This document shows, piece after piece, positions 1 to 33,901 of a stretch of 64,000 bases of DNA. The DNA is from Obrimoposthia wandeli (taxonomy: Eukaryota). The stretch lies in NCBI GenBank assembly GCA_977020255.1, contig CDROCS010000646.1, positions 806,001 through 870,000 on the forward strand. The letters run 5' to 3'. Positions within the stretch are counted from its first letter, which is position 1, and every line of letters starts with the position of its first letter. Both the position numbers and the translations under genes were made by a program. The notes beneath the pieces are model-generated. The model searched no databases. It had not been told where the DNA came from and saw only the letters and a program-made list of their open reading frames with translations.

Positions 1-140
1 AAATATATACATACTATCGCATTTAAAAAAGATACATACTATCACATTAAAAATATATATACAATATTCTGTTTATTACAATAAAATAAGAAGGATATTA
101 GTTAATACTTTCAAGAGGTTACCCCAGATTTTATATACAC

Positions 141-3100
141 CTATCTTAGACTATAGCGTCCATATGCGACGGATTTGTTTTTCTCAATCCAAACCCTTTT
201 ATCGTCATAACACCTTAACGCAATTTTATCATTATACATTGTAAATAATTGATGATTACGAGATAAAATACGTGTCTGACCGGCAGTTATAATTTCATCA
301 TCATCAACATAACACTTTATGTAATGCTCATGTCTGATTTCGGTTTGTTTAAGGGAGATACCCTTAGCCCTCATACTCGTTTTCAATGAGTAGCATTTAG
401 GTTTCAGAAATACCCATTCATCATAAAGCACTGTCCCCTTGCTTTCATCTTTAAACTTCCCAATCACATTTCGATGAGAATCGTTAAATAACTCATGTGT
501 GAGCGGGTAATTACTAGTATCTAACATCTGATCTTTAATCATTTGTTTTAAGAGGACATCTTTATCTATATGCTTACAATCTAAGAAAAACGAGTCTGTA
601 TCCATTGCAACTATGTTGATATCGCAATGATATTGCTTACGATACCGGTCAAGATCACTATACTGCAGTTGGTACATACGTAGTTTAGATAAGTCCAACA
701 CAGCTTGACCAATATATGATGGTCGATCCAGACAAATTTCTTTCTTTTGCATAAATAAAAGATTGAGATTGTCGGTTATTTGGGTATGCTTCTTAAACCA
801 AGGGCTTGAAACAAGTTTAGTAAACTGACGATCATTCTTGGTAAGACGGATATCTTTACGTTTTTTAAGATTTTCCACTGTCTTACCATATATTGAGTTA
901 TTTTTGAGTTTATAAAACTCTTTATCAAATGTAGTAGTACCCTCTGCCCGTTTCCGGCTATTGATATCAATATATGTTTTAAATATAGGAGCTTGATGAA
1001 ACTTTATTGCTCTATGCACTTGTTTAATTTCTGCACCCAGAAACAAGTAAAATTGTAGTAGTTGTGAGTGTATGATGTAATTATTTTTATCCTCATGGGT
1101 CATCAACAGCTTTGAAGCTTTTGAGCCGGGAGGGGTTTCTCTATTAGGCGCAATCGGTAAGTCATCAAGTTTATCATGAATACTGATGGGTATGCGTAAA
1201 TCAATTTCCAACAAGTATCCATGTTCTTTAAGACTTAAGTCCTGCATATTACCGTGAATATCCCTCTCAGTTATAAGCTCATATACCCATGTAAAATCTG
1301 TATGTGATAACGGTTGACTCCAGGCCCAGCCATATAGGTTATTTATGTCAATGTATAGGAGGAATGTTTCATCTGTTGTTTTAACGTAATGTTTATTGAT
1401 GAAAGTCATCCCTTCCCGTATCCCTGCCTCAAACATGTTATACATTTCGCGATCATGCAATAAATCCACATCATACTCTAATGTTTTTAATGCGCTAGCC
1501 CAACTGAGACCAGGGATACTAAAGAAATTGAGTGCCTCTAGATTATCATCATCCCTTATTTCTGTCTAAAGGCCTCAAAAACATCACATAACAGATACAC
1601 GTCAAGTTTCATATACTCAAGCATGTAGTCTTTAATAGTATTATACCCTAATACGTTCCACATCATTAGGGCTTCATTATATTGTTGATCAGTGACTCAA
1701 GAAGGAAACTCAGATTTAGCGGGTAACTGTGTCTCCATAAGCCTATCAACGCCACTAATATATTCATATGGAAATACCGCCTTACTTGTTGCAATATTAG
1801 GGTTTAGGTATTGTGTAGTATAAGGACAACTTGGCAAGTATGAAACTAAGGATTCAAGACTTGACGTTGTAAAAAGGTATGAATCAATGAATTTCAATGT
1901 CCCCCTCTTCATCTCTATACGGAGGGACATGAACTTTTCACTTGATTTAGGGATAATTGAAAAGGATTTACCTTTCAAGTCGGCATATTTTAAAATATGA
2001 TGTATGTCATAACCCATAAGGTTATGAAACACCACAGGTAAAACCGGTCTCTTTGCAAACTTGCGACTTAAATTGCATTTGTTGCATGCCGCACCCAAGT
2101 ATTTACCCGTGATATGATCATGATCTCTAACCATACGATCGTTTAATTTTTTACAAAGATAGCAATTAGTGCAATCTCTAAAGTTCAACATGTCATTATT
2201 AGTAAAAACCATAGGAACATTAATACTATTTACCCAAAAATCTGCCACTTCACCATTTATCAACTCAGTTAATTTATCTACAAAGTTTTTAGCACTCTGC
2301 AGACCGTAATAACTGAAATATTGTATTGAATTATTAGTGTTGTTTTTCAAAATCATCCCTATAGATATTGGTTTATGAATGTGTTTGAAAGTATTATGTG
2401 GCTCGAGTATTGACTCAAAGTCGGCATATACAACAAATGGTGGCGCAATAGATTTAGACCAGTCGGAAAACTGACACTTGATCTCTTTAGGCATTGTAAA
2501 CAAGGTTGTTAAATCTGTATTAATATTACAATGTACCCTGTGTTTGTCATATGAAATCGTGGTTCGAAATCCAAAAAGACATTTCGCACACCAAAAGAGA
2601 CGCACATTATATTTTTGAGTATTTAAAAGTCTATTCAGGTTTGTAATCCCTGTATAGTGATAATTACCGCTCTGTTCCAACAGCAACAAGTTCACTACTT
2701 TTTCGCACTGTTTAAGACTCGTTCTATAAATAACATTAACATATGGGTTTTTAAACACTAGATGACTACTATGATGCTCTACCTTTGTAGGTTTATAGGA
2801 TAATACTGTTATCGCTATATTATTGAGTTTTTCAAACGCCTTGATGCAGTATATCCTCATATGACCAGGCTCGCATATAAGTTCATTTAAATAACGTATT
2901 TAAAACACTGATCATCAGTATTATTTACGTTCACTATAGATAGTGTTTTAGCAAGCGCAACCGGGGTTTTATAAATGATGATCCTGCTACGTTTGAAAGT
3001 GCAGTAAATTTAAAAGATACCAACAGAATTTTAAATACTGACCATCCCGAACTCATATCCTTATAAATTTCAATTTTATTGTTGAGCTCAACTGTTCTTG

Positions 3101-3836
3101 TAGTGATAAAATCTTGTTCAAAAATATTTGCTTTACAGCTTACATGCCATGTTTTATGTTGACCCTCGTTATTGACAAATTCGGTTTCAACACCAAATTG
3201 TATTTTACAGGGACCAAACACATCTATACTGCTAGTAAGTTCAGTTAGCATAGTATCGTTAATGTATAGTTTAAGCATGTTTAATCCACTAACATCAAAA
3301 ACAAGATTTGATTGAATTGCACCTCCTATTTGATTGTTAAAAGTTAATGTATTATCTGAATTAATTGTAACAATATTATCACAGTCATCATCCGTAATAG
3401 TTAGGAATGAGTCGAAAAAATCATTTTCTGTTATAAACTCGTCCTGATCTATAAGTTCATCAATATTATTATTATTTAAGATTTCATTAGGGGTTAAAGG
3501 CTCAATAATTTCTACAACTTCAGGATAAGTATCAATTTCTACAACACTATCCGGTTCCCACGAGTCTACCACATCAAACTCTTCATTAAAATTAATAGTT
3601 TTTGCTATTTTATTGTTGTCTATTGTTGGTACTCTCATTACTTTACGTTTGTATGCTGACTTTTTAGACTTGAAATACGTCAGATGATCCTTATGATCAT
3701 TATAAAATGTTTGATAGTCAATACAATATAACACATCACAATGTGGACAAATAAAACCGCTTTTAAATTTATAATATTTAAGCATTACACTATGACATTC
3801 TATTCCATGATTAAAGTTTGTGCAATACTTGTACAA
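141..3836 (-). pseudogene. polB: Protein-primed family B DNA polymerase (pPolB), frameshifted into at least three ORFs (2934-3836, 1697-2860, 141-1469)
   Basis: PolB motifs YIDINNLYG, KLKNNSIYGK and MDTDSF; exonuclease YADFES and FHNLMGYD; Polinton Zn module CYLC..DHDH..G..C..CN; N-terminal SSGW motif. The 1470-1697 and 2860-2934 linkers read as PolB in shifted frames (e.g. YMKLDVYLLCDVFEAFR). Confidence 0.93.
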
Positions 3837-4827
3837 TGTACATAAATTACTTCCTCCACGAAGTTTAGGGTATACATGGATAATAGCCCCTGATGTAAAA
3901 CATCGCCGATAATAGCTTCCCTTTCAAAGGGCATGCCATTACGGTTAAAATAAATTTGATCAGTCGTGAAGACTTCATATAATTTATTTGCCAGATCTGT
4001 AATTTTCAGACCTGGACTAATATTAATGGGTTTGCAAGACCCTAATAAATTTGCAAATATTGTTATATCTGCTGGTAGTTTTCTCAATCTACGCAGCTTC
4101 TGACGAAATCGTTTACCTTTCCTACCTTCTGTTTTCAGTGTACTTAAATCAATATTTTGATTTTTAACTTTCTTTAACTGATTAAAATATTTTTTAAACG
4201 GGATATTTTCAAAACCCGAGTATATCTCATTTACGTCGAAATTTTCTACCGAATTAACAGGTGACCCAACAGGTGTCCCTGGTTTAAAAAGTACGGGGTA
4301 ACCTCTTGATTTAATGAACTTGTTCTGTGACCCCATTCCAGGAGTTAGACTGCCCCGCGTTACCGGGCAGCTATCGCAGTCGGGAGAATTAGATTTTATG
4401 TCCCCAAAAAGTTTATTTAAATGATTGTCATATGGAGACAAAACAACAGAATGAGAATGAGAAGATGAAGAAGAAGGAAGTAGAGAGTGAGCAGATTTCT
4501 CAGAAGATAAAAAAACTTTTGGCATTTTCTTCTTTTCATCATCATATTTTGTTGTTGACATCTTTGGAATTTTCTTCTTTTCAACATCAGAAATTGACTG
4601 TTTCCTAGTAGCATCATATTTTGCTGTTGATAACCATGGCGCAATTGATATTGGTGTGACACTGGGCATTGCTAAATTAAATTAAAAAATAATAATAATA
4701 ATCGAAAATTACCTTTCTTAACAGGTGTCGCATCCAAGTCGATATCATCATCATCATCATCATCATCCACTACAGGCTTCATCGTCCATCTTTTATTGCT
4801 GTTGAAAACAAAAATAATTTTCGACAT
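3800..4827 (-). CDS. Spliced viral gene (exons 4713-4827 and 3800-4671, 328 aa): acidic N-terminus, Lys/Ser-rich middle, basic patch, C-terminal ubiquitin-like domain
   Basis: Removing a 41-nt GT...AG intron (4672-4712) joins MSKIIF..D8..PVKK in frame to AMPSVTP. The C-terminal ITIFANLLG...DQIYF...G..FE...IGD pattern follows the ubiquitin beta-grasp pattern. Confidence 0.7.
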
Positions 4828-4875
4828 CTAAAAAAAATAAAATCAAAATAATAAAAATAAAATCAAAATAGTTAC
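4828..4875 (-). other. Probable 48-nt 5'-UTR intron
   Basis: Minus strand GTAACT...T-rich tract...TAG, ending immediately before the ATG at 4827. Confidence 0.6.
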
Positions 4876-4978
4876 TTTTGATAATTGCGATTAAATTGAT
4901 GAATGAATCTACACTGATTGTTTATATATGGTTCACAATCAGTGTAGTTGCTGCCCTAGATGCACACATACGTCACAC

Positions 4979-5049
4979 ATCACGTGTGTACTTACAAACT
5001 AGGAATGTGTAATAAAGACCCTTTATTCCCTAGTTGCTACACACGTGAT
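4979..5049. repeat. Inverted repeat with CACGTG cores upstream of the spliced gene/PolB unit
   Basis: ATCACGTGTGTA (4979-4990) and its reverse complement TACACACGTGAT (5038-5049), with inner near-complementary ACTAGGAAT/ATTCCCTAGT. Confidence 0.6.
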
Positions 5050-5303
5050 CATAAATTTTAATTACGGTCAATCAATTATGAATTTTTCATAACCGATATT
5101 CACACCGTTAGACTTTGAATTTTAAAAAATAATTCACACCATTAATTTTCTCTTAATTAGTAGATTTTAAATCTATTTTTTAATTTATCAAAACTCAATT
5201 TTTTTTTTTAATTTCGATAGGACAGTTGAAGCTATTTATAAAACAAATACGATTTTGAATACAAATTTTATTACCAATCAACACAAATAAAAAGGTTTGA
5301 CAT

Positions 5304-5627
5304 TTATATAGTTTGATCATACAACCATAAGATACATAGTGGACCGCAATTAGTAGTCAGTGGGTTTTGAGAACGAATTTTGTTGTAATATACATGTTTT
5401 CCTTGAGACTCTACATGCTTGATAAGTTTTCCCGGATAGTATACTCCAAGAGGGTCATACACATGTACAGAATTCCGTCTCACGAATAACGCAATCCAGT
5501 AATCTCCAGGAAGATTTGAGGTATGTGTATTGACAATATATCCACCAGGCGTTAATGTTGGGATTTTTTCCAACGGGTATACACCCTTAAATCGCGGTCC
5601 AAGCAGCAAACTAGTTATTTCATTCAC
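5304..5627 (-). CDS. Adenain-like cysteine protease; catalytic His appears replaced by Tyr
   Basis: NTHTSNLPGDYW...YDPLG...Q....CG. The paralog at 55852-56157 has GEHW at the same position. Confidence 0.88.
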   Translation of the reverse strand: MNEITSLLLGPRFKGVYPLEKIPTLTPGGYIVNTHTSNLPGDYWIALFVRRNSVHVYDPLGVYYPGKLIKHVESQGKHVYYNKIRSQNPLTTNCGPLCILWLYDQTI

Positions 5628-5681
5628 CTGAACAGTACTTGTTGTTAATAAAATCTTAAAACATAAATTAAAAAACTCACT

Positions 5682-6905
5682 TCATACAATCACACGTCGG
5701 CCTTTAGTTATTTCAAACTCAGAATCAAAAATCCCGTAAATCAGTACGTTTGTTGGGACTGTTAATGACTTGTGAAACTTGATGTCAAGGCGTAAATTAC
5801 CCTGTTTTGCTAATTGGTTTTGCGTGATATCAAAGTCAGGGGCTAAAACAAACGTGAAAAATGGATATTTGGTTTTGAATTCATCCAGTGATACGCCATT
5901 GTTTATATTCTTATCGAAATTACCCATATTTCTAATGATAGATTGGACATATGCAAAGGTGGTTTCACCTGTTTCAAAGTTTGTACTGTAAGATTCGTTA
6001 AAATCACTGTTTCTAGCAAGACTGATAGTGTTAACATTAGAATGATCGAATGTTGAAGAGTCTGTAGCACCATTACCGATAAGTTTTTCACCTGCTTGCA
6101 ACGTAATCAACACAAATTTAGGCAATTGTTCATCATCAAACACTTGATCCTTGTAAAAACTCGTAGAACCGATGGCTAAGGTATGATACATTAGCTTTCT
6201 GCGAGTATAGGGATATACAGCACTCCTAGATTGAAGACCAATATTATGTCCCATTAAAACATCATTATCAACTCTGACTCTTCTGACTTTAAGTTTAGCT
6301 TCAATAAATGTGATTCGCGATGGAGTCGTTCCGTAGTTCAGACTAAACATAGATTTATTAGGTACAAGTCTTACCATGATAGACACACCAGGTAAGAGAT
6401 ACTTTGGTTGCTCAAAAATTTCAGATAGAATAGTGGTACACAAGTCAATTTCTTTTGAGCGAGCAGCCCAACCTTTACGATTATCTTCAGTATCATCATA
6501 ACCTATACTCGGCAAACAAGTGTCTTTAGTGTCTGTGCTATAGTTAAGTATGGTTTCAATCATAGCTTTTTGTGCATATTGAGGATGGGTTTCTACTACA
6601 GTATTATTCATTGTTATATCTATGCTTTTAAATAGGGAATGCATCAAGAAATTTGATGGGATCACATTATCTGTAACAGCTATTGCTGTACCATCAGTTT
6701 TCGTTACTTTAATTTTCACAAACAACAAGGTATCATTCAAATCTAAGTACTCAATATCTGAACCTTGGATTTTAAACAGAATCTCTGCTGTTCTTGTTCC
6801 AGTAATATTGTTTGTTGGATATATATCTTCAAAGCTACCATTATTTACAACTACCTGGGGCAAAGCTCGATCAAAAATACATAATTCAGATTTACCACAA
6901 GCCAT
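5682..6905 (-). CDS. Major capsid protein (double jelly-roll, Polinton type), open 407 aa
   Basis: Polinton MCP motifs KSELCIF, YLDLNDTLL and YLLPGV; located between the protease and the core-protein gene; paralog at 56231-57451. Confidence 0.88.
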   Translation of the reverse strand: MACGKSELCIFDRALPQVVVNNGSFEDIYPTNNITGTRTAEILFKIQGSDIEYLDLNDTLLFVKIKVTKTDGTAIAVTDNVIPSNFLMHSLFKSIDITMNNTVVETHPQYAQKAMIETILNYSTDTKDTCLPSIGYDDTEDNRKGWAARSKEIDLCTTILSEIFEQPKYLLPGVSIMVRLVPNKSMFSLNYGTTPSRITFIEAKLKVRRVRVDNDVLMGHNIGLQSRSAVYPYTRRKLMYHTLAIGSTSFYKDQVFDDEQLPKFVLITLQAGEKLIGNGATDSSTFDHSNVNTISLARNSDFNESYSTNFETGETTFAYVQSIIRNMGNFDKNINNGVSLDEFKTKYPFFTFVLAPDFDITQNQLAKQGNLRLDIKFHKSLTVPTNVLIYGIFDSEFEITKGRRVIV

Positions 6906-6907
6906 TA

Positions 6908-7330
6908 TTAAGCAAATATTGTACCTTGTTTTCTTCGTTTGTTTATACTAGATGCTTTCTTTCTACCACTACCCTCTTGCTTTTTTGTTTCGGGTTCAAC
7001 CGTTTGTGCTGCTTCACTTGCTTTACGTTTACGTCGATTTTTAATAATTTTAACAACTGTACCAAAAGCTTCCTTAGCATCCGGTATGGCTCCGACAACT
7101 TCCCCTAGTGCATGTTGTTTAAGCATTGGTAACACAGATTTGTTGTTCATTATTACATCTTGAACTGTTTTAACTCCAACACGGCCTAATCCTTTCAGTA
7201 TAGGGAATGCTAACCGCCCCAATGTTTTCAACCATCCCGAACCGTACTGTTTGCCTACAAAATATGGTAATTCACCACCTTGTTGAGGCCCACTAAATGT
7301 CTCAATTATATTCATAACTGTAATGGACAA
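6908..7330 (-). CDS. Basic virion core/cement-like protein with Q-x-G-x-G putative protease sites
   Basis: QQGGELPYFVGKQYGSGW followed by an amphipathic segment and a basic tail; conserved at 57635-57847. Confidence 0.7.
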   Translation of the reverse strand: MSITVMNIIETFSGPQQGGELPYFVGKQYGSGWLKTLGRLAFPILKGLGRVGVKTVQDVIMNNKSVLPMLKQHALGEVVGAIPDAKEAFGTVVKIIKNRRKRKASEAAQTVEPETKKQEGSGRKKASSINKRRKQGTIFA

Positions 7331-7351
7331 CTATTTTTGAATACAGATTGT

Positions 7352-8520
7352 TTATACCTGATCTATACAACGGACATGTATGGTAAGGGATACTTTTGCA
7401 TTGTTGGAAAAACTTATTGGAACACCTGCATCGTTTCTAATATTAATTTCAATGTTTGAGATTACATTTGATGCTAAAGGGATATACATGGGTCTGTATA
7501 TTGCGATATTAACCGTGTCTCCTGGTGCTTTATTTTTATCTAACCATATAGATTTTAATAAGGGTATCATTTGACCTCCAACGTTTACAGGTTCACACAG
7601 ACTAGAATGCAAGTACATGTGATCAAACTCGTAATTTAATCGAGGTTTACCCGACCCGTTGCCCGTAAATCGTGATTTATCTAACCCTAATACATACATT
7701 AAACGTTGATCAAATCCAATATGCTCAATTCCATTCTTTAATACAAATTTTATTAGCTTATCATTATCATCCATATAAAATCTTTTAAATATGACGTCAC
7801 ATTTAGATTTAATGTATGCTACTAATGCATTTACATTATTATTATTTAAATCTTCTGTAAATACAATTTTCTTGTTGTATGAACCGGTTTTATAATGCAT
7901 ATATTGTAAATTATGTGCACCACAATCAGGTCTGATAGACGTTGATCCTTGTAAAACTCCTTTATCATCAGACTCGAAACTTTCTGAAGTTAATGTATTG
8001 AAAATGAATCCTAATTCATTTTTAGCGTCAGCATCCATCTTGATATAGAATTTTTGTTGTTGACGGATTTTATTAGTACAACATTATCTTTTTTATCAAT
8101 ACCTACACCAACTGTGATTAAGGAAATAGAAAGCTTTGCAATCTTATCTTTAGACGAGACGGTGAGTTTTGATATTTTATTAATTGTCTTTTTAATAACT
8201 TTTGGTTCTGATTTATCACCATGCAATCGCGGTTCTTTCTTTTCTACTTCTACTTGAGTATGAATTACTGATAAAGATATTTGATCAGTCTGTTGATTGG
8301 AGAATTTAATAGAATAATTAATTTCACTGCCCTTATTTAAAATAACAGGAGTGTTTGTATACGTAAATTCAGTTAATGCCGCCTCCCTTTTACCATTTAA
8401 CGTAATTGGATTCTCCCAATCTACAGTGAATAATGAAGCCATATTATTAGGTTGAGTTTTCGGACAACTATTACTCGGTAAAATCATATAGAAGTCTCTA
8501 TCTGGCTTGCTTTGATCCAT
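7352..8520 (-). pseudogene. Minor capsid protein (penton, single jelly-roll) split into two overlapping ORFs (8011-8520, 7352-8038)
   Basis: N-terminal YMILPSNS...N....F and C-terminal MYLHSSLCEP..VG..IPLL...YIPL...I.NIEINIRND.G motifs typical of Polinton mCP. Confidence 0.78.
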
Positions 8521-9513
8521 GTTGATTCAGAATATCCATGCCACTTTACGAGATATTTAGGTTTTACGGCCTTTAGATTTTACGACTTCTTGGATACGGA
8601 AAAGTGTAGGTTTATCAATTACTTGTAATTCAGGTTCATAAAATTTCCCTGTTATTACATTACAGTCATCATCAACTATAGAGTACATTACAGGATTTGC
8701 ACGTTTGTCTATTTTCTCTATCCTAAACACTTCATCACTCCAATTCTGATCAAAGTTTTTAATAAAGGGTCTACCACTAAACTTTGATATCCGAACATAA
8801 TCACCAGTCTTATGTTTGGGTTTATTAACTTTATCGACTTGATTACGACTCAGCCAAATTTCCATTGCATTTTTATCATTAATATCGACAGGTCTCAATC
8901 CGTCTAAACCTCTATGCTTACTGTGATTGTATGAAGTCATTACTTTTGGTAAAACGTCAACCCATCTTTTAATGCCTTGTGCAATAAAATGTATTTTTAA
9001 TCGATCTCTCAATGTTCTATTAAACCTTTCAACTAGGGCAGCTTTGAATTGTGAAACTACAGAGTAATGTTCAATATTTAATTTTTTAAATAAACTACCT
9101 ACATTTTTGTTGTAAAACTCTTTACCCTTATCGGTTTGCACATGTATGGGGACAGTTTTATCAATCATTATACTTAGAGCAGCCTCTATATCCTTACCTG
9201 ATTTAGATTTTACAGGTAATGCACGCGCATACCTTGTAAACACGTCAATACATGTTAAAATATACTTGTTACCATCATTGATACTTGCATATGGTATCAT
9301 TTTCATCAAATCGGCCTGCCATAAATCGTTAGGACCGCTTCTTCTGTATGCTCGAGTCGGGAACTTCCGCTTCATTGGCTTGTTTAGACTGTATGCTAGC
9401 TGATTGCTCAGCCATTTCTGAGTTTTCTTTTGACTCGATTGACTTTTTAATGATAGTTTGCCAATGCCGCTGAACCCAGCTGCGTTTTCGGGATCGTACC
9501 TTATCGTTTCCAT
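8484..9513 (-). CDS. int: Retroviral-type DDE integrase; C-terminal chromodomain reached only through a frameshift near 8557
   Basis: WQADL, QTDKGKEF and VERFNRTL. The shifted frame reads KYLVKWHGYSESTWI, matching the chromodomain of the element-3 paralog. Confidence 0.92.
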
Positions 9514-9564
9514 TACAACAAGTGAATTTAAAATCGATGTTTGGTATGTTATTACCCATTTTGT

Positions 9565-9894
9565 TTATGAGTTTATCAATTTTGCAATCAAAGGAGATAC
9601 TAAAGTAGCAATTATAGGTATTAATGCACCGATAAAACCACCTTTTTGTTTTAGAATTACTCTACGTTTACCAGTTTTACTTTTAGTATTCACTAAATCA
9701 CGTAAAGCTTTTTGATGTTTTCTAAGGTTATGTTTATGATTACCGATTTTTACAGTACCTTTTGTAATATTAAACAAGACTTCAACCAACTTATCAATAA
9801 CAAAGGGTGGAAATGACTTGAGAATACGTGATCTATATATGCTTGGAGCCTTGATTAAAGCCTGAAAGTAGGGAAGTATAGATTTTGATAACAT
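9565..9894 (-). CDS. Core/membrane-lytic-type precursor with C-terminal QKGG-FIGALIP amphipathic peptide
   Basis: Basic body, then KQKGG followed by a hydrophobic helix; homolog at ~60085-60400 (QNGG-FILALLPAIAS). Confidence 0.62.
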   Translation of the reverse strand: MLSKSILPYFQALIKAPSIYRSRILKSFPPFVIDKLVEVLFNITKGTVKIGNHKHNLRKHQKALRDLVNTKSKTGKRRVILKQKGGFIGALIPIIATLVSPLIAKLINS

Positions 9895-9925
9895 ATTTAA
9901 TGAATTAAACTATTTGCAATATTGT

Positions 9926-10243
9926 TTATAGTTTAATCCATTTACCAACTAGTTTATTTACACGCTTTTTATCCGACTTCTTAACCGACTTTCCAACTGC
10001 TTTCTTAACAGGTTTCTTCTTCTTCTTTAATGGTTTCTTTTTTACAGGTTTTCTCTTTACTGTCTTTACCGATTTCTTTAATGATTCATCGACTACTTTA
10101 CGCTGATGAAGCACTGATTTAATAAGATTTTTAATATGAGCATTCTTCTTTAGCATCAATTTGTTATCATTAGCGTGTAATTTATCACCCGGTCTCCATT
10201 TAGGTCCAACTCCACTAGGCATTGTTTCTTTCATAAATGACAT
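9926..10243 (-). CDS. Lysine-rich basic protein, probable DNA-condensing core protein
   Basis: 105-aa ORF with KKPVKK-type repeats inside the structural gene cluster. Confidence 0.55.
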   Translation of the reverse strand: MSFMKETMPSGVGPKWRPGDKLHANDNKLMLKKNAHIKNLIKSVLHQRKVVDESLKKSVKTVKRKPVKKKPLKKKKKPVKKAVGKSVKKSDKKRVNKLVGKWIKL

Positions 10244-10245
10244 GA

Positions 10246-10350
10246 TTAACAGGTAGATAGGCTTTTCTTTTGTTTATATACAAAATCATTATTGAAAATA
10301 TCGGTTCTCACGCGTAAATCGTCTGGACATTCCTGTGTAAAATCTAAAAA
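10246..10350 (-). pseudogene. C-terminal fragment of the A32-like packaging ATPase
   Basis: Translates FLDFTQECPDDLRVRTDIFNN, matching FLNFTQSCPDDLRIVTDIFN of the element-3 ATPase. Confidence 0.85.
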
Positions 10351-10379
10351 CAGTCTTATTTGTTGTAATTAAAGATAAT
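10351..10379 (+). repeat. Left 29-nt terminal direct repeat
   Basis: Exact match to 13086-13114; contains ATTAAA. Confidence 0.95.
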
Positions 10380-10415
10380 CTTTTCTAAATTTTGGAAAAT
10401 TATCTAATTTCTTGA

Positions 10416-11237
10416 CAAGGATACCACGAAGAGGAGATACCAGATAATCAAGATACTCACACTTGTGCGAGTATTTGTACAGCCCTCAACACGTCGCAGG
10501 TCAAATCCTATCAAGAAGACGCAGAAGACGGTCTCGATCTTTTCCACGACTCGTTCGCTTCAATAAAAACAATACCAAAGCCATTGTCTTGGTCCGAGAT
10601 AACTGACGATCTAGAAGAAGATTTCAGCAAAGCAGAGTTAAATTTTGAAAAGACGGAGAGGTACTATTTAAGATCAAGGTCGGTAGATTTCGAAAAATCA
10701 ATTCAAAAAGCTCGTATGCAAGAGGATGCCGAACCAACCTTACGGGACATCATGCTCAGGCTCGATCGCATCGAAACTGAACAGAGAGCAAAAGCCAGTG
10801 TACCACTCCGACAATATGACTTGCCACGCGCCGAAACGCCGACCTAACGCAAGCAAGAGCTCCTGGAAGGAGATAACCGAACAGAGCTTAGCAAGCTCCT
10901 CCTCGAGAAGGATAGAAGATCGTGGCATGAGTTCGAGTCTCTGCTGCGTGTCCACGATCTGCTCAAGCTCGGCGACTACTTCGCCGTCGAAGAACACCTC
11001 GCCGAGCGAGCAGCAATGCTCTTCAGTTCCGTCACCATCGGGTGGGCTGCAACAGAGGCCAGAGCGTCTAATCTCGCACGCATCACGGACATATCCCCAG
11101 AAGAGAACTCTCGTTATCAGGCCAGGAAAGCAGCTGCCGCTGCCAAATCTCGACCTTTCCCACGTGGTCGAGGTAACTTCTCGCGCCGAGGCCTTGGACG
11201 CCCGCCGTTTGCTAGAGGCGCTGGCCTCCCACAGTGA
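10416..11237 (+). pseudogene. ORF1 (capsid/core- or Gag-like), one in-frame TAA at 10845-10847, Arg/Gly-rich C-terminus
   Basis: ORFs 10584-10847 and 11016-11237 share one frame, which is open from 10416 except for the single stop. It ends RPFPRGRGNFSRRGLGRPP. No ATG was found at the 5' end. Confidence 0.6.
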
Positions 11238-12903
11238 CCCATTCTACGTTCACTGGTGGCGAGATTATATGCTAGTCAGTATAATGTCGGCAGATGTCTT
11301 CAATAGACAACCTTTACCAATCCTTACTCGGGATATAATTGATGACTATTTCAATACCAATGCCATTACGCAACCACAAGCTGGGGATGGAAACAACATC
11401 TTGGAAGTCACAGGAGAAACAGAAATTGAAACGAGAAACGTCATGAACAATGACTCAAGCGGGTGGATAAACTTCCACGAAATCCGAAAAGTTAAAATGG
11501 CCCAAGACAAGCTCCAACAAGATTACTTTGAAAGCATGCCTTCGCAAACTCTCCAAATGCCAGAGGATTATAGTGACGTCGACCTAGACGGAAGGATGGA
11601 TATGCTGGCAACTAAGGGTTATGCACCCTTTGCCTCGATTAAAGCATCAAGACAAAGAAAGAGATTAAAAGTCCCAAATGACGAGAAGCAACACATCAAC
11701 GCATGTGTTCATGCTCTGCTCAAAGCCGGCATCATTGAGAAATCAACAAAAGGACCATTTTGCTCACAGGTGCGTATGGTACCTAAAGCCAACTCAAGTC
11801 TCAGAAGATTAATAGTGGATTTCAAGCACCTCACTCCACATTTGCCGCAGCTTTTCATGAAGATTCCGAATTTAGCCAACAGGCTACAGACAATTCCAAA
11901 TGATAGGCTTGCGATCAGAATTGATCTAAAAGGGGCCTTCTATCAGATTAAGATAAGGCAGGCGGCCAGGCACCTCACAAACTTTTGGAATGAGGATTGT
12001 TATTATCGTTTTACACGATTGCCTATGGGACTTCGCCAGAGTCCGGCTATTCTACAGTGGACTATCACAAGAATCCTGCAGCAGCTACAAGAAAAGTGGC
12101 CAGTTGATTTCGCACATGTCCACATCGATGATATCCTCATCGTGGCAAAACCTGAAGCAGCTATTTGGAATGAAGTCTCTAATTTCTTTAAAAAATGGGG
12201 CTTGCAAATAAATTGGAAGAAGTCACAGCTTACACCAATTTCCAAGATAGAATACTGCGGCATGCTCATTGATCTCAAGAAGCAAGAGGTCAGCATCAGC
12301 AAGGAAAAGTGGCACACTGCCGATGAAATAATCAATCAGGATCAATTTTCAGATGACGCAATTGGATATTTAAATTACGTAAGTAATGTTTTGAAATGGC
12401 CATATGTGGCAAATTATGTGCGATCAGATCTGAGAAAGTTGTGCTATTATAATCTAAAGAATTATGCGGCCACATGGAGTTGGAAAAAACAGATGGGACA
12501 AATTTGGGCAACTGATGCTACAAAGTCCACAATTGCCGTTACAAAAACGAGGCCATTCAAAATCGAGCTCACTGCCAAACTCCAGGAGGAGAATATTTAC
12601 TTGCAGGAGGCAAGAGCAGTGTTTATGGCTATGTGGAAAGCCTCAAGAGGAGATACCATCCTTTGTGACAATCTGGCTCTAGTATGGAGCATCAGAAACA
12701 GAAGAATCCCAGCAAAAGTCCAGCACTGGTGGACATTGATAGCAGTCCAAATGATGGCAACCATTAAGAAAATCAAAGTCCAATTCGTGCGAACGGAGCA
12801 CAATCCTGCCGACGCGCCAACAAGGTCGGAGGAAACGAGATCCAGATGGACGGAAGACTACGGAGTGCTGCTTTCGCTGACAATGCATCAAGCGGTGACG
12901 TGA
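10726..12903 (+). CDS. pol: Polymerase: reverse transcriptase plus RNase H, 725-codon open frame overlapping ORF1
   Basis: RT motifs RRLIVDF, IDLKGAFYQI, LPMGLRQSP, HIDD, GLQINWKKS and EYCGMLID; RNase H motifs ATDAT, LQEARA, CDN and NPADAPTR. Confidence 0.93.
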   Translation: MPNQPYGTSCSGSIASKLNREQKPVYHSDNMTCHAPKRRPNASKSSWKEITEQSLASSSSRRIEDRGMSSSLCCVSTICSSSATTSPSKNTSPSEQQCSSVPSPSGGLQQRPERLISHASRTYPQKRTLVIRPGKQLPLPNLDLSHVVEVTSRAEALDARRLLEALASHSDPFYVHWWRDYMLVSIMSADVFNRQPLPILTRDIIDDYFNTNAITQPQAGDGNNILEVTGETEIETRNVMNNDSSGWINFHEIRKVKMAQDKLQQDYFESMPSQTLQMPEDYSDVDLDGRMDMLATKGYAPFASIKASRQRKRLKVPNDEKQHINACVHALLKAGIIEKSTKGPFCSQVRMVPKANSSLRRLIVDFKHLTPHLPQLFMKIPNLANRLQTIPNDRLAIRIDLKGAFYQIKIRQAARHLTNFWNEDCYYRFTRLPMGLRQSPAILQWTITRILQQLQEKWPVDFAHVHIDDILIVAKPEAAIWNEVSNFFKKWGLQINWKKSQLTPISKIEYCGMLIDLKKQEVSISKEKWHTADEIINQDQFSDDAIGYLNYVSNVLKWPYVANYVRSDLRKLCYYNLKNYAATWSWKKQMGQIWATDATKSTIAVTKTRPFKIELTAKLQEENIYLQEARAVFMAMWKASRGDTILCDNLALVWSIRNRRIPAKVQHWWTLIAVQMMATIKKIKVQFVRTEHNPADAPTRSEETRSRWTEDYGVLLSLTMHQAVT

Positions 12904-12983
12904 TCCACTAATGTGTCTCCCATTTTTATGTCTCTTACGTCTTTTTATGGCTAAAGTTTTTTAGTTGTCTGGTATCTTTGGTT

Positions 12984-13044
12984 CACTCAGTCACATCACT
13001 TCTTGCCTACCACCTTCGGGTTCTAGGCGTGATGTGATTGGGTG
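12984..13044 (+). other. Epsilon-like bulged stem-loop (predicted RNA structure)
   Basis: Manual pairing: 16-bp lower stem (two G-U), 5-nt UUCUU bulge, 5-bp stem, 2x2 internal loop, 3-bp stem, C(UUCG)G tetraloop. Confidence 0.75.
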
Positions 13045-13051
13045 GCCTTTT

Positions 13052-13091
13052 TATATATAAGCTGGCATAAAATATAGAAATTTGCCAGTCT
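13052..13091 (+). promoter_or_regulatory. TATA box followed ~33 nt later by an initiator-like CCAGTC at the start of the right repeat
   Basis: TATATATAAG at 13052-13061; CAGTCT begins at 13086. Confidence 0.5.
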
Positions 13092-13114
13092 TATTTGTTG
13101 TAATTAAAGATAAT
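13086..13114 (+). repeat. Right 29-nt terminal direct repeat
   Basis: Exact match to 10351-10379. Confidence 0.95.
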
Positions 13115-13225
13115 TTGATTAAACATGTTTTTATTTTGAAGTAATTTAGTTACAAAATGTGTTTTCCCACTCCCACTAGGTCCTACTATTTGGTAAACCG
13201 CGTTATTTTTAAGTTTTATCATCAT
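13115..13225 (-). pseudogene. N-terminal fragment of the A32-like packaging ATPase (Walker A)
   Basis: Translates MMIKLKNNAVYQIVGPSGSGKTHFVTKLL. Confidence 0.88.
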
Positions 13226-13255
13226 CAATAATAATAAATCAAAAGAAACGATTGT

Positions 13256-13518
13256 TTATAAACGTTTTATTAATATATACAACAACAGAGAATTAAAAAT
13301 TGACGCAGAAAAGGTTATATACATCATGTTTGAACGATTAATTTGAACGAATTTTTCAAAATCTTTATTCCGTTTGATATCTCTATAGACATGGGTGCAA
13401 ACAATTTCCTTTATATTATTACGAGAAAGTTCATCAAAACTAGAAAAGTATTGAACTCCATTTATTGTTCCGTTTATAATTTCCTCGACTGCATCATCAA
13501 CTAATTTATCGTTTTCAT
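13256..13518 (-). pseudogene. Small ORF with a C-terminal hydrophobic helix; start codon out of frame
   Basis: Frame open ~85 codons ending YITFSASIFNSLLLYILIKRL*; the nearest ATG (13516-13518) is one base out of frame. Confidence 0.4.
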
Positions 13519-13540
13519 CTATTTATATAAATCATAAATT

Positions 13541-13897
13541 TCAATTGTTTATACCATGAAATTTTACATTTCTTACTCTCCGTTCGATCAGACATCTGCA
13601 TACTGGACATGAATATAACATTCTAGAACATGATATACATGTATTTACATGCCCACAAGGGAGAAATACTACTTCAATATGATTATTTAAACATACTACA
13701 CATTCGGGTTCCTTTAAAATGTATGAAAGTATATTTATATATTGTTTTTCAGGTTTCATTTCTAAATTAGATAAATCACAAAGCAATTCAAATAGTGAAT
13801 TGTATTCACCATATCGCATCATTTTATATTTTAAAACAGATTTTATTCTATCTTTTGTGAAAAACATTTTCAAAAATCTGATTTGGTTTGTATCCAT
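13541..13897 (-). CDS. IAP-type C3HC4 RING domain protein
   Basis: CVVC...VVFLPCGHVNTCISC...CPVCR. Confidence 0.9.
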   Translation of the reverse strand: MDTNQIRFLKMFFTKDRIKSVLKYKMMRYGEYNSLFELLCDLSNLEMKPEKQYINILSYILKEPECVVCLNNHIEVVFLPCGHVNTCISCSRMLYSCPVCRCLIERRVRNVKFHGINN

Positions 13898-14440
13898 CTA
13901 CATATCGAATTTCTCAATAGTCAAAGGATATTCAATTATACAATCTGTTTCGATTTTCTCAATAACATTAGCCTCATTATAGGGTCCTAAACATTTTGAA
14001 TGGCATATATCAGGTAATTTTATATCAATATCTGATACATGTACTTTTCCATTCAATGGTGATGTATCAAAATCGATTTTCTTGTCCATAGTTTCAATTA
14101 TTGGCACATTTGAAACATTTAACTTTAAAAGAAATGGACATGTAGGAAAAAATTTCATATGTTGCTTCATTGGTTTAAGATACCGTTCCCATTCGGATAA
14201 CGCACCTTGGCAGTATATACATTTTACTTTATCGGTTGAATCATCATCATGTTTATAAAATCCGGCTTTAGCTAAATCATTTACAGATTGTTTCCCTTTA
14301 AAATTTATAATTAATGATCTTAATCTTTCACTTTCACGTCTATATTTCCAGTGTAAAACTTTCATTCTAGAATAACCTACTTTTCGTCTAACTAAAACAT
14401 CATCAACAGTTGTATAATGAAGTATATAATCAACTAGCAT
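13898..14440 (-). CDS. iap: Inhibitor of apoptosis, BIR domain
   Basis: ERLRS...LAKAGFY...VKCIYC-x16-H-x6-C, the canonical BIR spacing. Confidence 0.92.
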   Translation of the reverse strand: MLVDYILHYTTVDDVLVRRKVGYSRMKVLHWKYRRESERLRSLIINFKGKQSVNDLAKAGFYKHDDDSTDKVKCIYCQGALSEWERYLKPMKQHMKFFPTCPFLLKLNVSNVPIIETMDKKIDFDTSPLNGKVHVSDIDIKLPDICHSKCLGPYNEANVIEKIETDCIIEYPLTIEKFDM

Positions 14441-14482
14441 TTCAAATAATGTAAGAATAAAAATTCAACTAAAATTTATTGT

Positions 14483-14975
14483 TTATATCAAAAGTAAAAT
14501 ATCAGTTATTATCAAAGTTACATCAAAGTTATAATCCAAATCCTTGAGACCGAGTATGACCACTTTTCCGCTTGCAAATATGTTGACGCGCAGAGGATTG
14601 TGTTTTGTAAACCTCAAAGTAGGAAACAACTCAGGTTCGAACATGCATGCAGCTCCACACTTTTGAGACAACTTGTATAGGTTCACCTTCTTACCTAAAT
14701 CGACAGTAACCGTTACTGATTGAATACGATCAATCTTTATTCTAAATGGACACTTGAGCATAGTTGTAGTAATAGGTTTCTTGCAACCCATTATCCTGCA
14801 TGCTCCTAATAATTAACTAACTAACTAACTAACATAAAAAAATACCTGAACGGAAGATTATAAGGGTATAATCCTTACATATGTGCACGTACTGACATGG
14901 TTTCCCGGCTTTGAAGGGTAAGTGACTGATGTCTCCTTTAACTTTACTTTTATAATTAATATTTGCAAGATTCAT
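14483..14975 (-). CDS. TBP: Minimal TATA-binding-protein homologue, spliced (intron 14806-14845), 150 aa
   Basis: IIFRSG-ACRIMG, IQSVTVTVDLG..VNL and FEPELFPTL..NIFASGKVVILG match both TBP repeats; removing the 40-nt GT-AG intron restores the frame. Confidence 0.88.
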
Positions 14976-16223: not shown

Positions 16224-16389
16224 GTAAAGTGTCGGTTCTAAAACAATAGCACACAAAGCCCGCCCCCCAGAACAAGGCACAAGGAACAAAGCACATCTGT
16301 ATGACTAAGCGAATTCCAGATGTCCTTTGTTCCTTGTGCCTTGTTCGGGGGGGGCTTTGTTTGCTATTGTTTTAGAACCGACACTTTAC
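16224..16389. repeat. Long imperfect palindrome (~75-bp arms, 17-nt loop) near the element-1 end
   Basis: GTAAAGTGTCGGTTCTAAAACAATAGC...CACATCTG paired with CAGATGT...GCTATTGTTTTAGAACCGACACTTTAC. Confidence 0.9.
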
Positions 16390-31282: not shown

Positions 31283-32065
31283 TTAATTCCCTATGCTATG
31301 AAATCTAATCTTTCTTACTCGTTTAATGATAATTGTCTTGCAATATGGACATGGAATAAAACGATCTGAACATTTAATACATGTGTTTAAGTGTTCATAT
31401 GGTAAAAATGCCACGGAAATCATATCTGTCATGCAAATAACACATTCGGGATTTGGTAAGAGGTATTCGAGATAATTTATAGCATGCCTTGGTTCAGATT
31501 TTATTTCTAAAGATCTTAAATCCGTTATAAACTCATATATATATAATCATATTTATTACCGAATATTTTAAACCTATTAACTAAAACAGATTTGATTCTA
31601 TCATGGCTATAATCACGTTACAGCAAAACTATTTCACGAGTTTCCATATGAGCATCAATTTCATCATTACTAATATGATATTCAAAAATACATCCATTCT
31701 TGATTCCCATACTAGATGCTTTACAATCTCGGGTATGAAAGATTCTTTCAGGCATACTATCAATAAACTCAAGTTGATGTACTGCTTTCTGACAGAAACA
31801 ACATCTATAAGAATCACTCCAAATATAGACATACGGGAAAATCAATAATGTAAAGACAGAACAAAAAACACAGCCAGTAAACACAATTTACGTTATCCCT
31901 TGAATCATCGTGTTTATAAAATCCTGCCTTTTCTAAAACTCTCTTATCTGCTAAACCAGTAAACTTTCTTCGTAATGATTCTAATCTTTTTTTCAGATAT
32001 CATATATTCATTTCTTCTTGAAATCTTATAAAAAACGTTGTCATCTAATGGTGAGTTCTCCATTT
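31283..32065 (-). pseudogene. iap: IAP pseudogene (BIR remnants plus RING)
   Basis: Manual translation gives RLESL...KAGFYKHDDSRDNVNCVY, then DRIKSVL and CVIC..VAFLPYEH..TC..C...CPYC. Confidence 0.8.
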
Positions 32066-33770: not shown

Positions 33771-33901
33771 TTTTAAAGTATGTTACTAAAAATAGAATAT
33801 TAGTCATGCAATGAGTCATCGATGAGTCATAGGACGACCTCATCACGACCTTAACGTTTCCTCATACCCCTGGGAGGGCGGGTATGACTCATAATGTCTT
33901 C

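What the first reader, a model, noticed from the sequence alone, without database searches (positions are those of the whole stretch)
12984..13044. Epsilon-like priming/packaging hairpin in the RT element
Seen: a 16-bp lower stem, a single-sided UUCUU bulge, an upper stem with a 2x2 loop and a C(UUCG)G tetraloop. It lies in the only non-coding interval, between the pol stop and (circularly) the start of ORF1. Established: hepadnaviral epsilon has this lower stem/bulge/upper stem layout, and its bulge templates the protein-linked primer. Inference: the bulge could template 5'-AAGA(A), which can pair with UCUU in the terminal repeat (CAGUCUUAU), implying protein-primed reverse transcription. Caveat: if transcription starts at the repeat, the hairpin lies only at the RNA 3' end, unlike canonical 5' epsilon.
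Basis: partly seen in the sequence, partly recalled or inferred. Interest (0 to 1): 0.82.

Follow-up and report, generated by a model that had tools for sequence, protein, structure and literature searches.

The report
Bulged RNA hairpin in hepadnavirus-like insert
A very stable, strand-specific bulged RNA hairpin sits in the 3' untranslated end of an integrated 2.7-kb hepadnavirus-like reverse-transcribing element; it may be that element's signal for starting reverse transcription, but it lies at the opposite RNA end from the known signal and no relative shares it.

Summary
The hairpin is real and exactly as described: 61 nt, 16-bp lower stem, 5'-side UUCUU bulge, interrupted upper stem, C(UUCG)G loop. 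It folds at -33.9 kcal/mol (z -7.4). Two G.U pairs make it 7 kcal/mol better on the + strand.

It lies in a 2,764-bp insert with identical 29-nt ends. The insert carries one intact 725-aa RT-RNase H gene. 17 of 31 nearest relatives match the hepadnaviral polymerase C-terminal family and none matches retroviral or Ty3 RNase H families.

The insert replaces about 0.4 kb of a Maverick/Polinton packaging-ATPase gene. The 29-mer is therefore most likely the element's own terminal redundancy (R), not a target duplication. A TATA box lies 8 nt after the hairpin and 33 nt before R, so the hairpin would be on the RNA only near its 3' end.

UCUU, matching the bulge, sits at the outer end of R, where the integrated DNA ends.

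Against the reading: no Rfam epsilon match, no similar hairpin in eleven related loci, no detectable terminal-protein domain, and a weaker stem-bulge-stem-loop in the canonical 5' position.

Verdict: observation confirmed, interpretation partly supported.

The parts
10351..13114 (+). Whole insert: integrated hepadnavirus-like reverse-transcribing element, 2,764 bp (unit length 2,735 bp) with higher G+C than its flanks
   Evidence: Exact 29-nt repeat at both ends with 2,735-nt spacing. GC is 0.44 against about 0.32 in the flanks. The host ATPase remnants abut both ends.
10351..10379 (+). 5' copy of the 29-nt terminal repeat (inferred R, starting at the inferred RNA 5' end, CAGTC)
   Evidence: interpretation.
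13086..13114 (+). 3' copy of the 29-nt terminal repeat (R), starting 33-34 nt after the TATA box
10351..10715 (+). AUG-free 365-nt leader; the first AUGs are at 10716 and 10726
   Evidence: 0 ATG against 6.6 expected; P(0) = 0.0004 in 5,000 shuffles.
10373..10405 (+). Small A/U-rich stem-bulge-stem-loop near the RNA 5' end (7 bp, CU bulge on the 5' side, 7 bp, triloop). The bulge is the two bases just after the repeat. Rival candidate for the priming signal.
   Evidence: dG -7.9, z -2.7, 0 of 200 shuffles as stable; kept in the 120-nt context fold.
10379..10382 (+). UCUU spanning the last base of the repeat and the next three bases; candidate acceptor matching the hairpin bulge
   Evidence: The integrated DNA ends at the first base of this tetramer in the 3' copy.
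10354..10357 (+).
10368..10373 (+). ATTAAA poly(A)-signal-like hexamer inside the repeat (second copy at 13103-13108)
   Evidence: The signal consensus comes from general knowledge.
10726..12903 (+). Intact polymerase ORF, 725 aa: poorly predicted N-terminal 250 aa, RT domain, RNase H domain; no breaks
   Evidence: RVT_1 5e-20 at aa 346-513. PF00336 E 0.029 at aa 596-702. Catalytic columns are present. AF2 is confident for aa 270-717.
12968..12977 (+). 10-nt stretch just 5' of the hairpin, exactly complementary to 10435-10444 in the leader (possible long-range 5'-3' pairing)
   Evidence: Inverted repeat I6. About 0.03 such matches are expected by chance between two regions of this size (my estimate).
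12980..13047 (+). The hairpin of the finding (core 12984-13044) with a 3-bp basal extension
12984..12999 (+). 5' arm of the 16-bp lower stem
   Evidence: I23.
13000..13004 (+). Single-sided 5-nt bulge UUCUU
13005..13028 (+). Upper stem (5 bp, 2x2 internal loop, 3 bp) capped by the C(UUCG)G tetraloop
13029..13044 (+). 3' arm of the lower stem
13052..13060 (+). TATATATAA, a TATA box 8 nt after the hairpin and 33-34 nt before the repeat
13053..13098 (+). Second inverted repeat or hairpin pairing the 3' half of the TATA box with the first nine bases of the repeat
   Evidence: z -3.6 on + and -3.8 on -. Analogous TATA-enclosing repeats occur in relatives L008, L089 and L090.
10246..13228 (-). Host Maverick/Polinton packaging-ATPase gene, copy 1. 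It is broken once, by this insert, with loss of about 0.4 kb of its middle.
   Evidence: The P-loop piece and the C-terminal tail each align to the ATPase of the second Maverick copy.

Best explanation
The hairpin is a selected, sense-strand RNA structure in the 3' untranslated part of the genome-length transcript of an integrated hepadnavirus-like (Blubervirales/HEART-type) element that encodes only a polymerase.

Inferred life cycle: transcription starts about 33 nt after the TATA box, at the first base of the 29-nt repeat, and runs once round a 2.7-kb template. It passes the hairpin and the TATA box and ends shortly after the ATTAAA in the second copy of the repeat. The RNA therefore carries a short terminal redundancy, and the hairpin occurs once, about 40 nt upstream of the 3' redundancy.

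Most likely role: the hairpin is the polymerase-recognition signal that nucleates reverse transcription, a functional analogue of epsilon. The 3'-proximal bulge bases (UCUU) would template a short primer (AAGA). That primer would be moved about 80-85 nt downstream to the identical UCUU at the outer edge of the 3' redundancy. Minus-strand DNA would then run to the RNA 5' end, giving a linear duplex with a redundancy of about 29-32 nt. That is the form found integrated here.

Shown: the structure and its strand asymmetry, the repeat, the signal geometry, and the polymerase family. Inferred: the transcript ends, the priming role, and protein priming.
For: The hairpin is exceptionally stable and strand-specific, with G.U pairs and an RNA-specific C(UUCG)G cap. 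Its layout of about 60 nt with a stable lower stem, a 5'-side bulge and a less regular upper stem matches the description of epsilon and of nackednavirus epsilon in PMC8903280.

Polymerase family: 17 of 31 nearest relatives hit PF00336 (best E 1.1e-13), and none hits PF17917, PF17919 or PF00075. One relative is a 2,668-nt circle by terminal overlap.

The insert replaces about 0.4 kb of the host ATPase gene, so the 29-mer is the element's own redundancy. TATA-to-repeat spacing is 33-34 nt and ATTAAA lies inside the repeat. Relative L001 has a fold-back artefact whose axis is 33 nt after its TATA box, suggesting a molecule end there. The leader is AUG-free (P = 0.0004).

The redundancy length matches the roughly 33 nt reported for a proto-nackednavirus pgRNA (PMC12691608). 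UCUU lies exactly at the repeat's outer boundary. A 10-nt complementarity links the leader to the base of the hairpin.
Against: With the inferred start site the hairpin is not 5'-proximal. Known epsilon acts from the 5' end (PMC8903280), and epsilon of proto-nackednaviruses was annotated in the 5' region at +36 to +90, though those authors searched only that region.

There is no Rfam match. No similar hairpin occurs in eleven related loci, and in L008 and L089 there is no room for one between the pol stop and the TATA box.

No PF00242 (terminal protein) match was found, and there is no G-[LIV]-Y motif in the window protein. The N-terminal 252 aa are modelled at pLDDT below 50. The UCUU match is expected by chance fairly often: about 0.44 anywhere in the repeat and about 0.07 at its boundary, by my estimate.

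The upper stem with a UUCG cap is rigid, while PMC8903280 reports that over-stable upper stems impair priming. No DR2-like copy of the first 20 nt of the repeat exists. A 5' mini stem-bulge-stem-loop competes for the role.
Confidence: 0.35

Rival explanations
1. The hairpin is a 3'-end-specific RNA processing or stability element. Because it lies upstream of the start site, it is present only on the second pass of the poly(A) signal. It could mark that copy for cleavage and polyadenylation, or protect the 3' end, while the promoter-proximal copy of ATTAAA is ignored.
For: The hairpin sits 59 nt upstream of the 3' ATTAAA and is absent from the 5' copy of the repeat. Pararetroviruses with short redundancies must bypass the first poly(A) signal (general knowledge). 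Relatives also place hairpins or inverted repeats around the TATA-to-start region, which would form in RNA only at the 3' end.
Against: Nothing requires a 16-bp stem with a one-sided 5-nt bulge for this role. The recurrent structures in relatives correspond to the second hairpin (13053-13098), not to this one. No sequence similarity to known upstream polyadenylation elements could be tested.
Confidence: 0.22
2. The priming signal is the small stem-bulge-stem-loop at 10373-10405, in the canonical 5'-proximal position. Its CU bulge lies just past the repeat. The large hairpin would then have another, unknown role.
For: Its position, 23-55 nt from the inferred RNA 5' end, matches the 5' placement of epsilon in hepadnaviruses (PMC8903280) and the annotation in a proto-nackednavirus. 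The bulge lies within 1-2 nt of where the integrated DNA ends. 0 of 200 shuffles fold as well.
Against: It is weak (-7.9 kcal/mol, z -2.7) and almost all A-U. It was found by eye in an A/T-rich leader, so multiple testing applies. The leader as a whole is not unusually structured (z +0.5). It does not explain why a 61-nt G+C-rich hairpin is kept in an A/T-rich untranslated region.
Confidence: 0.15
3. The 29-mer is a target-site duplication and the element is a non-viral retroposon. Its RT recognises the 3' hairpin of its own RNA and starts cDNA synthesis at a chromosomal nick or break, as stringent-type LINEs recognise a 3' stem-loop. There would be no protein priming.
For: A 3' stem-loop is a known RT recognition signal in some non-LTR elements (general knowledge). 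Relatives occur inside large eukaryote-like contigs. BLAST extends host ATPase similarity 4 aa into the 3' copy of the 29-mer and 1 aa into the 5' copy. HEART elements, the described non-viral relatives of hepadnaviruses, exist (PMC12691608).
Against: A duplication plus a 0.4-kb target deletion at the same spot needs two independent events within 29 bp of each other. A rough estimate puts that at about 0.2% for a 15-kb Maverick. The polymerase has no endonuclease domain. The 3' end has no poly(A) or simple repeat. An outward-facing TATA box 25 nt from the 3' end makes sense only for a circular or redundant template.
Confidence: 0.1
4. It is a DNA-level element: an inverted repeat acting as an upstream promoter or enhancer site, or as a cruciform, next to the TATA box.
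For: It ends 8 nt before the TATA box. Inverted repeats around TATA boxes recur in relatives.
Against: Two G.U pairs would be A.C mismatches on the other strand, which folds 7.4 kcal/mol worse. The UUCG cap is special only in RNA. Arms 29 nt apart with an internal second stem are atypical of protein-binding palindromes.
Confidence: 0.07
5. It is a precursor of a small regulatory RNA (pre-miRNA-like hairpin), or a neutral chance palindrome.
For: Its length and stem size are in the pre-miRNA range.
Against: A 5-nt one-sided bulge and a UUCG cap are unusual for Dicer substrates. There is no Rfam match. Chance is excluded at z -7.4.
Confidence: 0.05

Closest known systems
Epsilon, the encapsidation and priming signal of hepadnaviruses and nackednaviruses (as described in PMC8903280)
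   Same: It is about 60 nt long and has a stable lower stem, a central bulge on the 5' side, an interrupted upper stem and an apical loop. The 3'-proximal bulge bases are identical to a tetramer in the 3' terminal redundancy. The associated polymerase is an RT-RNase H of the hepadnaviral type.
   Different: It lies upstream of the TATA box, so it would be 3'-only rather than 5'-proximal. It lies outside the redundancy. The cap is an ultrastable UUCG tetraloop. There is no Rfam match. No terminal-protein domain is detectable. The element has no core gene.
Predicted epsilon of proto-nackednaviruses from rotifers (RMPV 64 nt, RTPV 55 nt; PMC12691608)
   Same: These are small genomes with a TATA box, a poly(A) signal and a short redundancy of about 33 nt. 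One of them (RTPV) also lacks a recognisable core gene and has the polymerase as its first large ORF. In both cases epsilon is only predicted, from folding.
   Different: Their epsilon was sought only in the 5' terminal region and was annotated there (+36 to +90 in RTPV). Here the strong hairpin is at the other end, and only a weak hairpin occupies the 5' position. I did not fetch their sequences for comparison.
HEART retroelements of insects (Gong and Han 2018, cited in PMC12691608 and PMC11551314; paper not held)
   Same: They are chromosomal, hepadnavirus-related RT elements of invertebrates.
   Different: Their termini and cis-elements could not be read, so membership could not be tested.
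3' stem-loops recognised by the RT of stringent-type non-LTR retrotransposons
   Same: A stable hairpin near the RNA 3' end lies next to the point where cDNA synthesis begins.
   Different: This element has no endonuclease, no poly(A) or simple-repeat tail, and a different RT clade. Its terminal redundancy and TATA geometry point to a circular or redundant template.
Integrated double-stranded linear DNA of hepadnaviruses
   Same: The insert starts at the inferred RNA 5' end and ends inside the 3' redundancy. It was inserted with loss of target DNA and without a target duplication.
   Different: The redundancy is 29 nt. The much shorter redundancy of hepadnaviruses is known to me only from general knowledge. 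No DR1/DR2 pair is recognisable.

Membership tests
Epsilon (hepadnavirus/nackednavirus priming signal) | Bipartite stem-loop of about 60 nt with a central 5'-side bulge and a stable lower stem | tested here: met
   61 nt, 16-bp lower stem, 5-nt one-sided bulge. Features as listed in PMC8903280.
Epsilon (hepadnavirus/nackednavirus priming signal) | 5'-proximal position on the terminally redundant genomic RNA | tested here: not met
   The hairpin ends 8 nt upstream of the TATA box and 41 nt upstream of the repeat. The start site itself is inferred, not mapped.
Epsilon (hepadnavirus/nackednavirus priming signal) | The 3'-proximal bulge bases match a 3-4-nt acceptor in the 3' repeat | tested here: met
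   UCUU occurs at repeat positions 4-7 and 29-32. The evidence is weak: chance is about 0.44 for any site and about 0.07 for the boundary site.
Epsilon (hepadnavirus/nackednavirus priming signal) | Similarity to curated epsilon covariance models | tested here: not met
   No Rfam match at E<=10 in 10200-13300.
Epsilon (hepadnavirus/nackednavirus priming signal) | Conservation or covariation in related elements | tested here: not met
   Model R1 finds nothing in 11 related loci. The relatives share at most 46% RT identity, so this is not decisive.
Epsilon (hepadnavirus/nackednavirus priming signal) | Hairpin-dependent covalent priming on the polymerase | not testable with these tools
   This is a functional property.
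Hepadnavirus-type polymerase (Blubervirales and relatives) | RT domain with catalytic aspartates | tested here: met
   RVT_1 5e-20. D400, D468 and D469 lie in invariant or nearly invariant columns.
Hepadnavirus-type polymerase (Blubervirales and relatives) | Hepadnaviral C-terminal (RNase H) domain, PF00336 | tested here: inconclusive
   The window protein scores 14.2 bits, E 0.029, below the 22.4-bit cut-off. 17 of 31 nearest relatives match at E<=0.01. P0002 scores 26 bits and passes the cut-off.
Hepadnavirus-type polymerase (Blubervirales and relatives) | N-terminal terminal-protein domain with a priming tyrosine (G-L/V/I-Y motif, PMC11551314) | tested here: inconclusive
   No PF00242 hit in the window protein or in 22 relatives. 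No such motif is present, and the G298 column is followed by variable residues. AF2 pLDDT is below 50 for aa 1-252.
Hepadnavirus-like genome plan | Small circular genome of about 3 kb with a TATA box, a poly(A) signal and a short terminal redundancy | tested here: met
   2,735-nt unit, TATA box, ATTAAA and a 29-nt repeat. Relative L003 closes into a 2,668-nt circle. Circularity of this element is inferred.
Hepadnavirus-like genome plan | Core (capsid) gene upstream of or overlapping the polymerase gene | tested here: not met
   The 365-nt leader is AUG-free and the polymerase is the first substantial ORF. The upstream ORFs of relatives have no counterpart here.
Hepadnavirus-like genome plan | DR1/DR2 direct repeats | tested here: inconclusive
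   No second copy of 8 nt or more of the first 20 nt of the repeat was found. The only other exact repeat is a 14-mer at 10429 and 12645.
LTR retrotransposon / retrovirus | Long terminal repeats, integrase, protease, Ty3/retroviral RNase H | tested here: not met
   The repeat is only 29 nt. The only Pfam domain is RVT_1. No relative matches PF17917 or PF17919.
DIRS-like element | Tyrosine recombinase gene | tested here: not met
   There is a single ORF with no PF00589 match. DIRS-like proteins appear only as distant hits.
Non-LTR retrotransposon | Endonuclease domain, 3' poly(A) or simple repeat, target-site duplication | tested here: not met
   No endonuclease domain and no tail. The insertion coincides with a target deletion.

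The most novel reading that the evidence does not exclude
A hepadnavirus relative carries its priming and packaging hairpin once, at the 3' end of the genomic RNA, a few dozen bases upstream of the acceptor in the terminal redundancy. Primer transfer would then be a short local hop. This could be the ancestral arrangement, linking 3'-end recognition by retroelement RTs to the 5' epsilon and long-range transfer of modern hepadnaviruses. It would occur in a polymerase-only genome caught as a fresh, intact linear-DNA integration inside a Maverick/Polinton.
Probability: 0.28. Interest if true: 0.85.

Novelty: new variant of a known kind. Interest (0 to 1): 0.6.

Why it matters
Protein-primed reverse transcription from an RNA bulge is known only in hepadnaviruses and nackednaviruses, and its origin is open. 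Epsilon could not be found in the first proto-nackednavirus (PMC11551314). In later ones it was predicted only by folding the 5' end (PMC12691608).

This insert is intact and apparently young. Its two ends look like the ends of a replication intermediate, so sequence alone fixes where minus-strand DNA probably began and ended. It offers two concrete candidate signals next to that origin.

If the 3' hairpin is the signal, the position of epsilon is not a fixed feature of the lineage, and the long-range primer transfer of hepadnaviruses would be derived. The locus also documents integration of such an element into another virus-like mobile element.

Tried and rejected
- **Rfam.** The E-value search of 10200-13300 and the gathering-threshold search of the whole window both returned nothing.
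- **Exact-protein look-up of the window polymerase.** It is not on record.
- **Close relatives for covariation.** IMG/VR scans with the protein, an RT profile and the stem pattern found nothing. The GTDB genome scan found nothing. The single metagenome scan gave only generic RTs of 23-34% identity, which are not usable. Alignments A1 and A2 were too diverse for that tool.
- **Structure route to a terminal-protein domain.** AF2 left aa 1-252 unmodelled. The Foldseek search of viral models ranked caulimovirus, retrovirus and hepadnavirus polymerases alike, so it does not discriminate. No solved hepadnaviral polymerase appeared among the best 60 hits shown in either sequence search of the PDB.
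- **Core-gene homology.** Upstream ORFs of relatives have no match in the window element and no Pfam family.
- **Host identity.** The Maverick integrase has only unnamed metagenomic relatives of at most 65% identity, and no tRNA genes were found.
- **Tracing host ATPase similarity into the 29-mer.** It extends only 4 aa on one side and 1 aa on the other, too short to decide.
- **Rejected readings.** LTR element, DIRS, LINE, and a DNA-only palindrome are rejected for the reasons given under Membership tests and Rival explanations.

Full report
**1. The observation**

It has a 16-bp lower stem, a one-sided UUCUU bulge, and an upper stem of 5 bp, a 2x2 internal loop and 3 bp. The cap is a C(UUCG)G tetraloop. 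MFE is -33.9 kcal/mol, z is -7.4, and 0 of 200 shuffles fold as well.

Three more pairs extend the stem to 12980-13047. The fold is unchanged in longer contexts. The lower stem contains two G.U pairs, and the complementary strand folds 7.4 kcal/mol worse.

In a scan of all 64 kb on both strands it is the fifth strongest 65-nt fold. The four stronger folds are palindromes of roughly equal stability on the two strands. It is a G+C-rich island (54%) in an untranslated stretch of about 31% G+C. The structure is real, far from chance, and points to the sense-strand RNA.

**2. The element around it**

An exact 29-nt direct repeat (10351-10379 and 13086-13114) is unique in the window and bounds a 2,764-bp block. 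The block has higher G+C than its flanks.

It holds one intact ORF of 725 aa (10726-12903) with an RT domain (RVT_1, 5e-20). The C-terminal region gives a sub-threshold match to the hepadnaviral polymerase C-terminal family PF00336 (E 0.029).

An exhaustive HMMER search found only distant relatives, at most 46% identity over the RT. Of the 31 nearest relatives that cover the RNase H region, 17 match PF00336 (best E 1.1e-13). None matches the Ty3, retroviral or cellular RNase H families. The RT aspartates and the four RNase H acidic residues sit in invariant or nearly invariant columns and are present here.

Relatives include a contig that closes on itself into a 2,668-nt circle (L003) and a unit of about 3.4 kb (L001/L002). 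Copies also occur inside large eukaryote-like contigs.

The element has no LTRs, integrase, protease, recombinase or endonuclease. I read it as a member of the hepadnavirus-related radiation described as proto-nackednaviruses and HEART elements (PMC12691608, PMC11551314), with confidence of about 0.75. I could not test which of those named groups it belongs to.

**3. What the 29-mer is**

The flanks belong to a Maverick/Polinton-like element. It carries a protein-primed family-B polymerase, an rve integrase, an IAP-like pair of ORFs and a P-loop ATPase fragment. A second, diverged copy lies at about 56-61 kb in the same gene order.

I compared the two frames of the second copy's ATPase separately with the first copy. 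The N-terminal P-loop piece lies directly right of the insert. The C-terminal tail lies directly left of it. About 0.4 kb of the gene's middle is missing.

One event therefore inserted a linear DNA and deleted target DNA. A target-site duplication would require an earlier, independent deletion whose junction happened to fall inside the same 29 bp. The 29-mer is thus most likely the element's own terminal redundancy; I put this at about 0.8.

Several observations agree with that reading:
- A TATA box (13052-13060) lies 33-34 nt before the repeat, and the repeat opens with CAGTC.
- ATTAAA lies inside the repeat.
- The 365 nt from the repeat to the first AUG contain no AUG (6.6 expected, P = 0.0004).
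- In relative L001 a fold-back assembly artefact has its axis 33 nt after that element's TATA box, as if the molecules ended there.
- A proto-nackednavirus pgRNA is reported to have a redundancy of about 33 nt between its TATA box and poly(A) tail (PMC12691608).

The insert runs from the inferred RNA 5' end to a point inside the 3' redundancy. That is the shape of a run-off minus-strand copy made double-stranded. It is not the shape of an LTR-type or target-primed product.

**4. Where that puts the hairpin**

The hairpin ends 8 nt before the TATA box. It would therefore be transcribed only on the way to the 3' end, about 40 nt upstream of the 3' redundancy. I found no canonical TATA box upstream of the hairpin, but start sites were not mapped.

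**5. The priming idea**

According to PMC8903280, epsilon is a 5'-proximal stem-loop of about 60 nt. The 3'-proximal bulge bases template a 3-4-nt primer, which is moved to a matching acceptor in the 3' repeat. Nackednavirus versions have stable lower stems but not stable upper stems.

The layout here fits that description. The 3'-proximal bulge bases are UCUU. It also occurs at position 29 plus the next three bases of the circle.

An origin at 4-7 would give a 7-nt DNA redundancy, whereas 29 nt is observed. An origin at 29-32 gives 29-32 nt and places the integrated end within three bases of the acceptor. This is coherent but statistically weak. UCUU occurs about once per 45 nt in these untranslated regions. 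By my estimate, chance is about 0.44 for any site in the repeat and about 0.07 for the boundary.

A 10-nt exact complementarity joins the leader (10435-10444) to the bases just 5' of the hairpin (12968-12977). It could bring the RNA ends together.

**6. Evidence against**

- No Rfam family matches at E<=10.
- A covariance model of the hairpin finds nothing in eleven related loci.
- In L008 and L089 the space between the pol stop and the TATA box is too short to hold such a hairpin.
- No terminal-protein domain is detectable. There is no PF00242 match in this protein or in 22 relatives. The G-L/V/I-Y motif named in PMC11551314 is absent. The N-terminal 252 aa are modelled with low confidence.
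- No core gene is present.
- No DR2-like copy of the first 20 nt of the repeat exists.
- A small A/U-rich stem-bulge-stem-loop at 10373-10405 occupies the canonical 5' position. Its CU bulge lies immediately after the repeat's last base (dG -7.9, z -2.7).
- The authors who predicted epsilon in proto-nackednaviruses searched only the 5' region. The literature therefore neither supports nor excludes a 3' signal.

**7. Verdict**

- The element is hepadnavirus-like.
- The repeat is a terminal redundancy.
- The hairpin is a selected sense-strand RNA structure near the 3' end of the genomic RNA.
- An epsilon-like priming role is the single most likely function (0.35) but is unproven.
- The main rivals are a 3'-end processing or stability role (0.22), the 5' mini-hairpin being the real signal (0.15), and RT recognition for target-primed insertion (0.10).
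Noticed in passing
window 1-14800 (copy 1) and about 56200-61200 (copy 2): Two diverged, syntenic Maverick/Polinton-like elements. They share a protein-primed PolB fragment with an Endonuclease_7 motif, an rve integrase (61% aa identity between copies), a P-loop packaging ATPase and several unassigned ORFs. Integrase relatives are almost all unnamed metagenomic proteins of at most 65% identity.
   Followed up: partly
window 13541-14440 (-) and 31286-31990 (-): IAP-like ORFs (a BIR domain and a C3HC4 RING on adjacent ORFs) lie next to the Maverick ATPase remnant. A second, roughly 47-54% identical copy lies 17 kb away, outside either Maverick.
   Followed up: no
window 13053-13098; L008 2940-2987; L090 7287-7342; L089 2189-2257: In this element and several distant relatives, an inverted repeat or hairpin encloses or abuts the TATA box (z -3.6 to -6.2). 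In RNA it could form only at the 3' end. Its function is unknown, and it may be a family trait.
   Followed up: partly
window 10429-10442 and 12645-12658: An exact 14-nt direct repeat beginning with a 9-nt purine run. One copy is in the leader and one is in the polymerase ORF. About 0.01-0.03 such repeats are expected by chance. It does not fit DR1/DR2 geometry and is unexplained.
   Followed up: no
window 10959-11013 (+): A second stem-bulge-stem-loop (55 nt, -29.4 kcal/mol, z -3.7) lies inside the low-complexity N-terminal part of the polymerase ORF. It is slightly more stable on the other strand.
   Followed up: no
L001 1-230 and L002 3' end: Both metagenomic contigs of one relative end in fold-back artefacts. 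The L001 axis lies 33 nt after the TATA box, which suggests the sequenced molecules were linear with an end at the transcript start.
   Followed up: partly
L004 (GCA_039182315.1, contig JBCDCG010001485.1): The closest RT relative (38% identity) is annotated as coming from a Chloroflexota MAG. A eukaryote-type RT-RNase H element on a 2.1-kb contig is probably mis-binned.
   Followed up: no
window 16224-16389; 33890-33960 (beside the N gap at 33354-33527); 45282-45442 and 54044-54209: Strong palindromes stable on both strands (-37 to -40 kcal/mol per 65 nt), and a 166-nt direct repeat of 89% identity 8.8 kb apart. They are probably small foldback or MITE-like repeats of the host genome.
   Followed up: no
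window 15800-56400: About 40 kb of 21-34% G+C sequence has no ORF of 150 aa or more, no tRNA gene and no Rfam match. This is consistent with an A/T-rich eukaryotic chromosome of unidentified origin.
   Followed up: no
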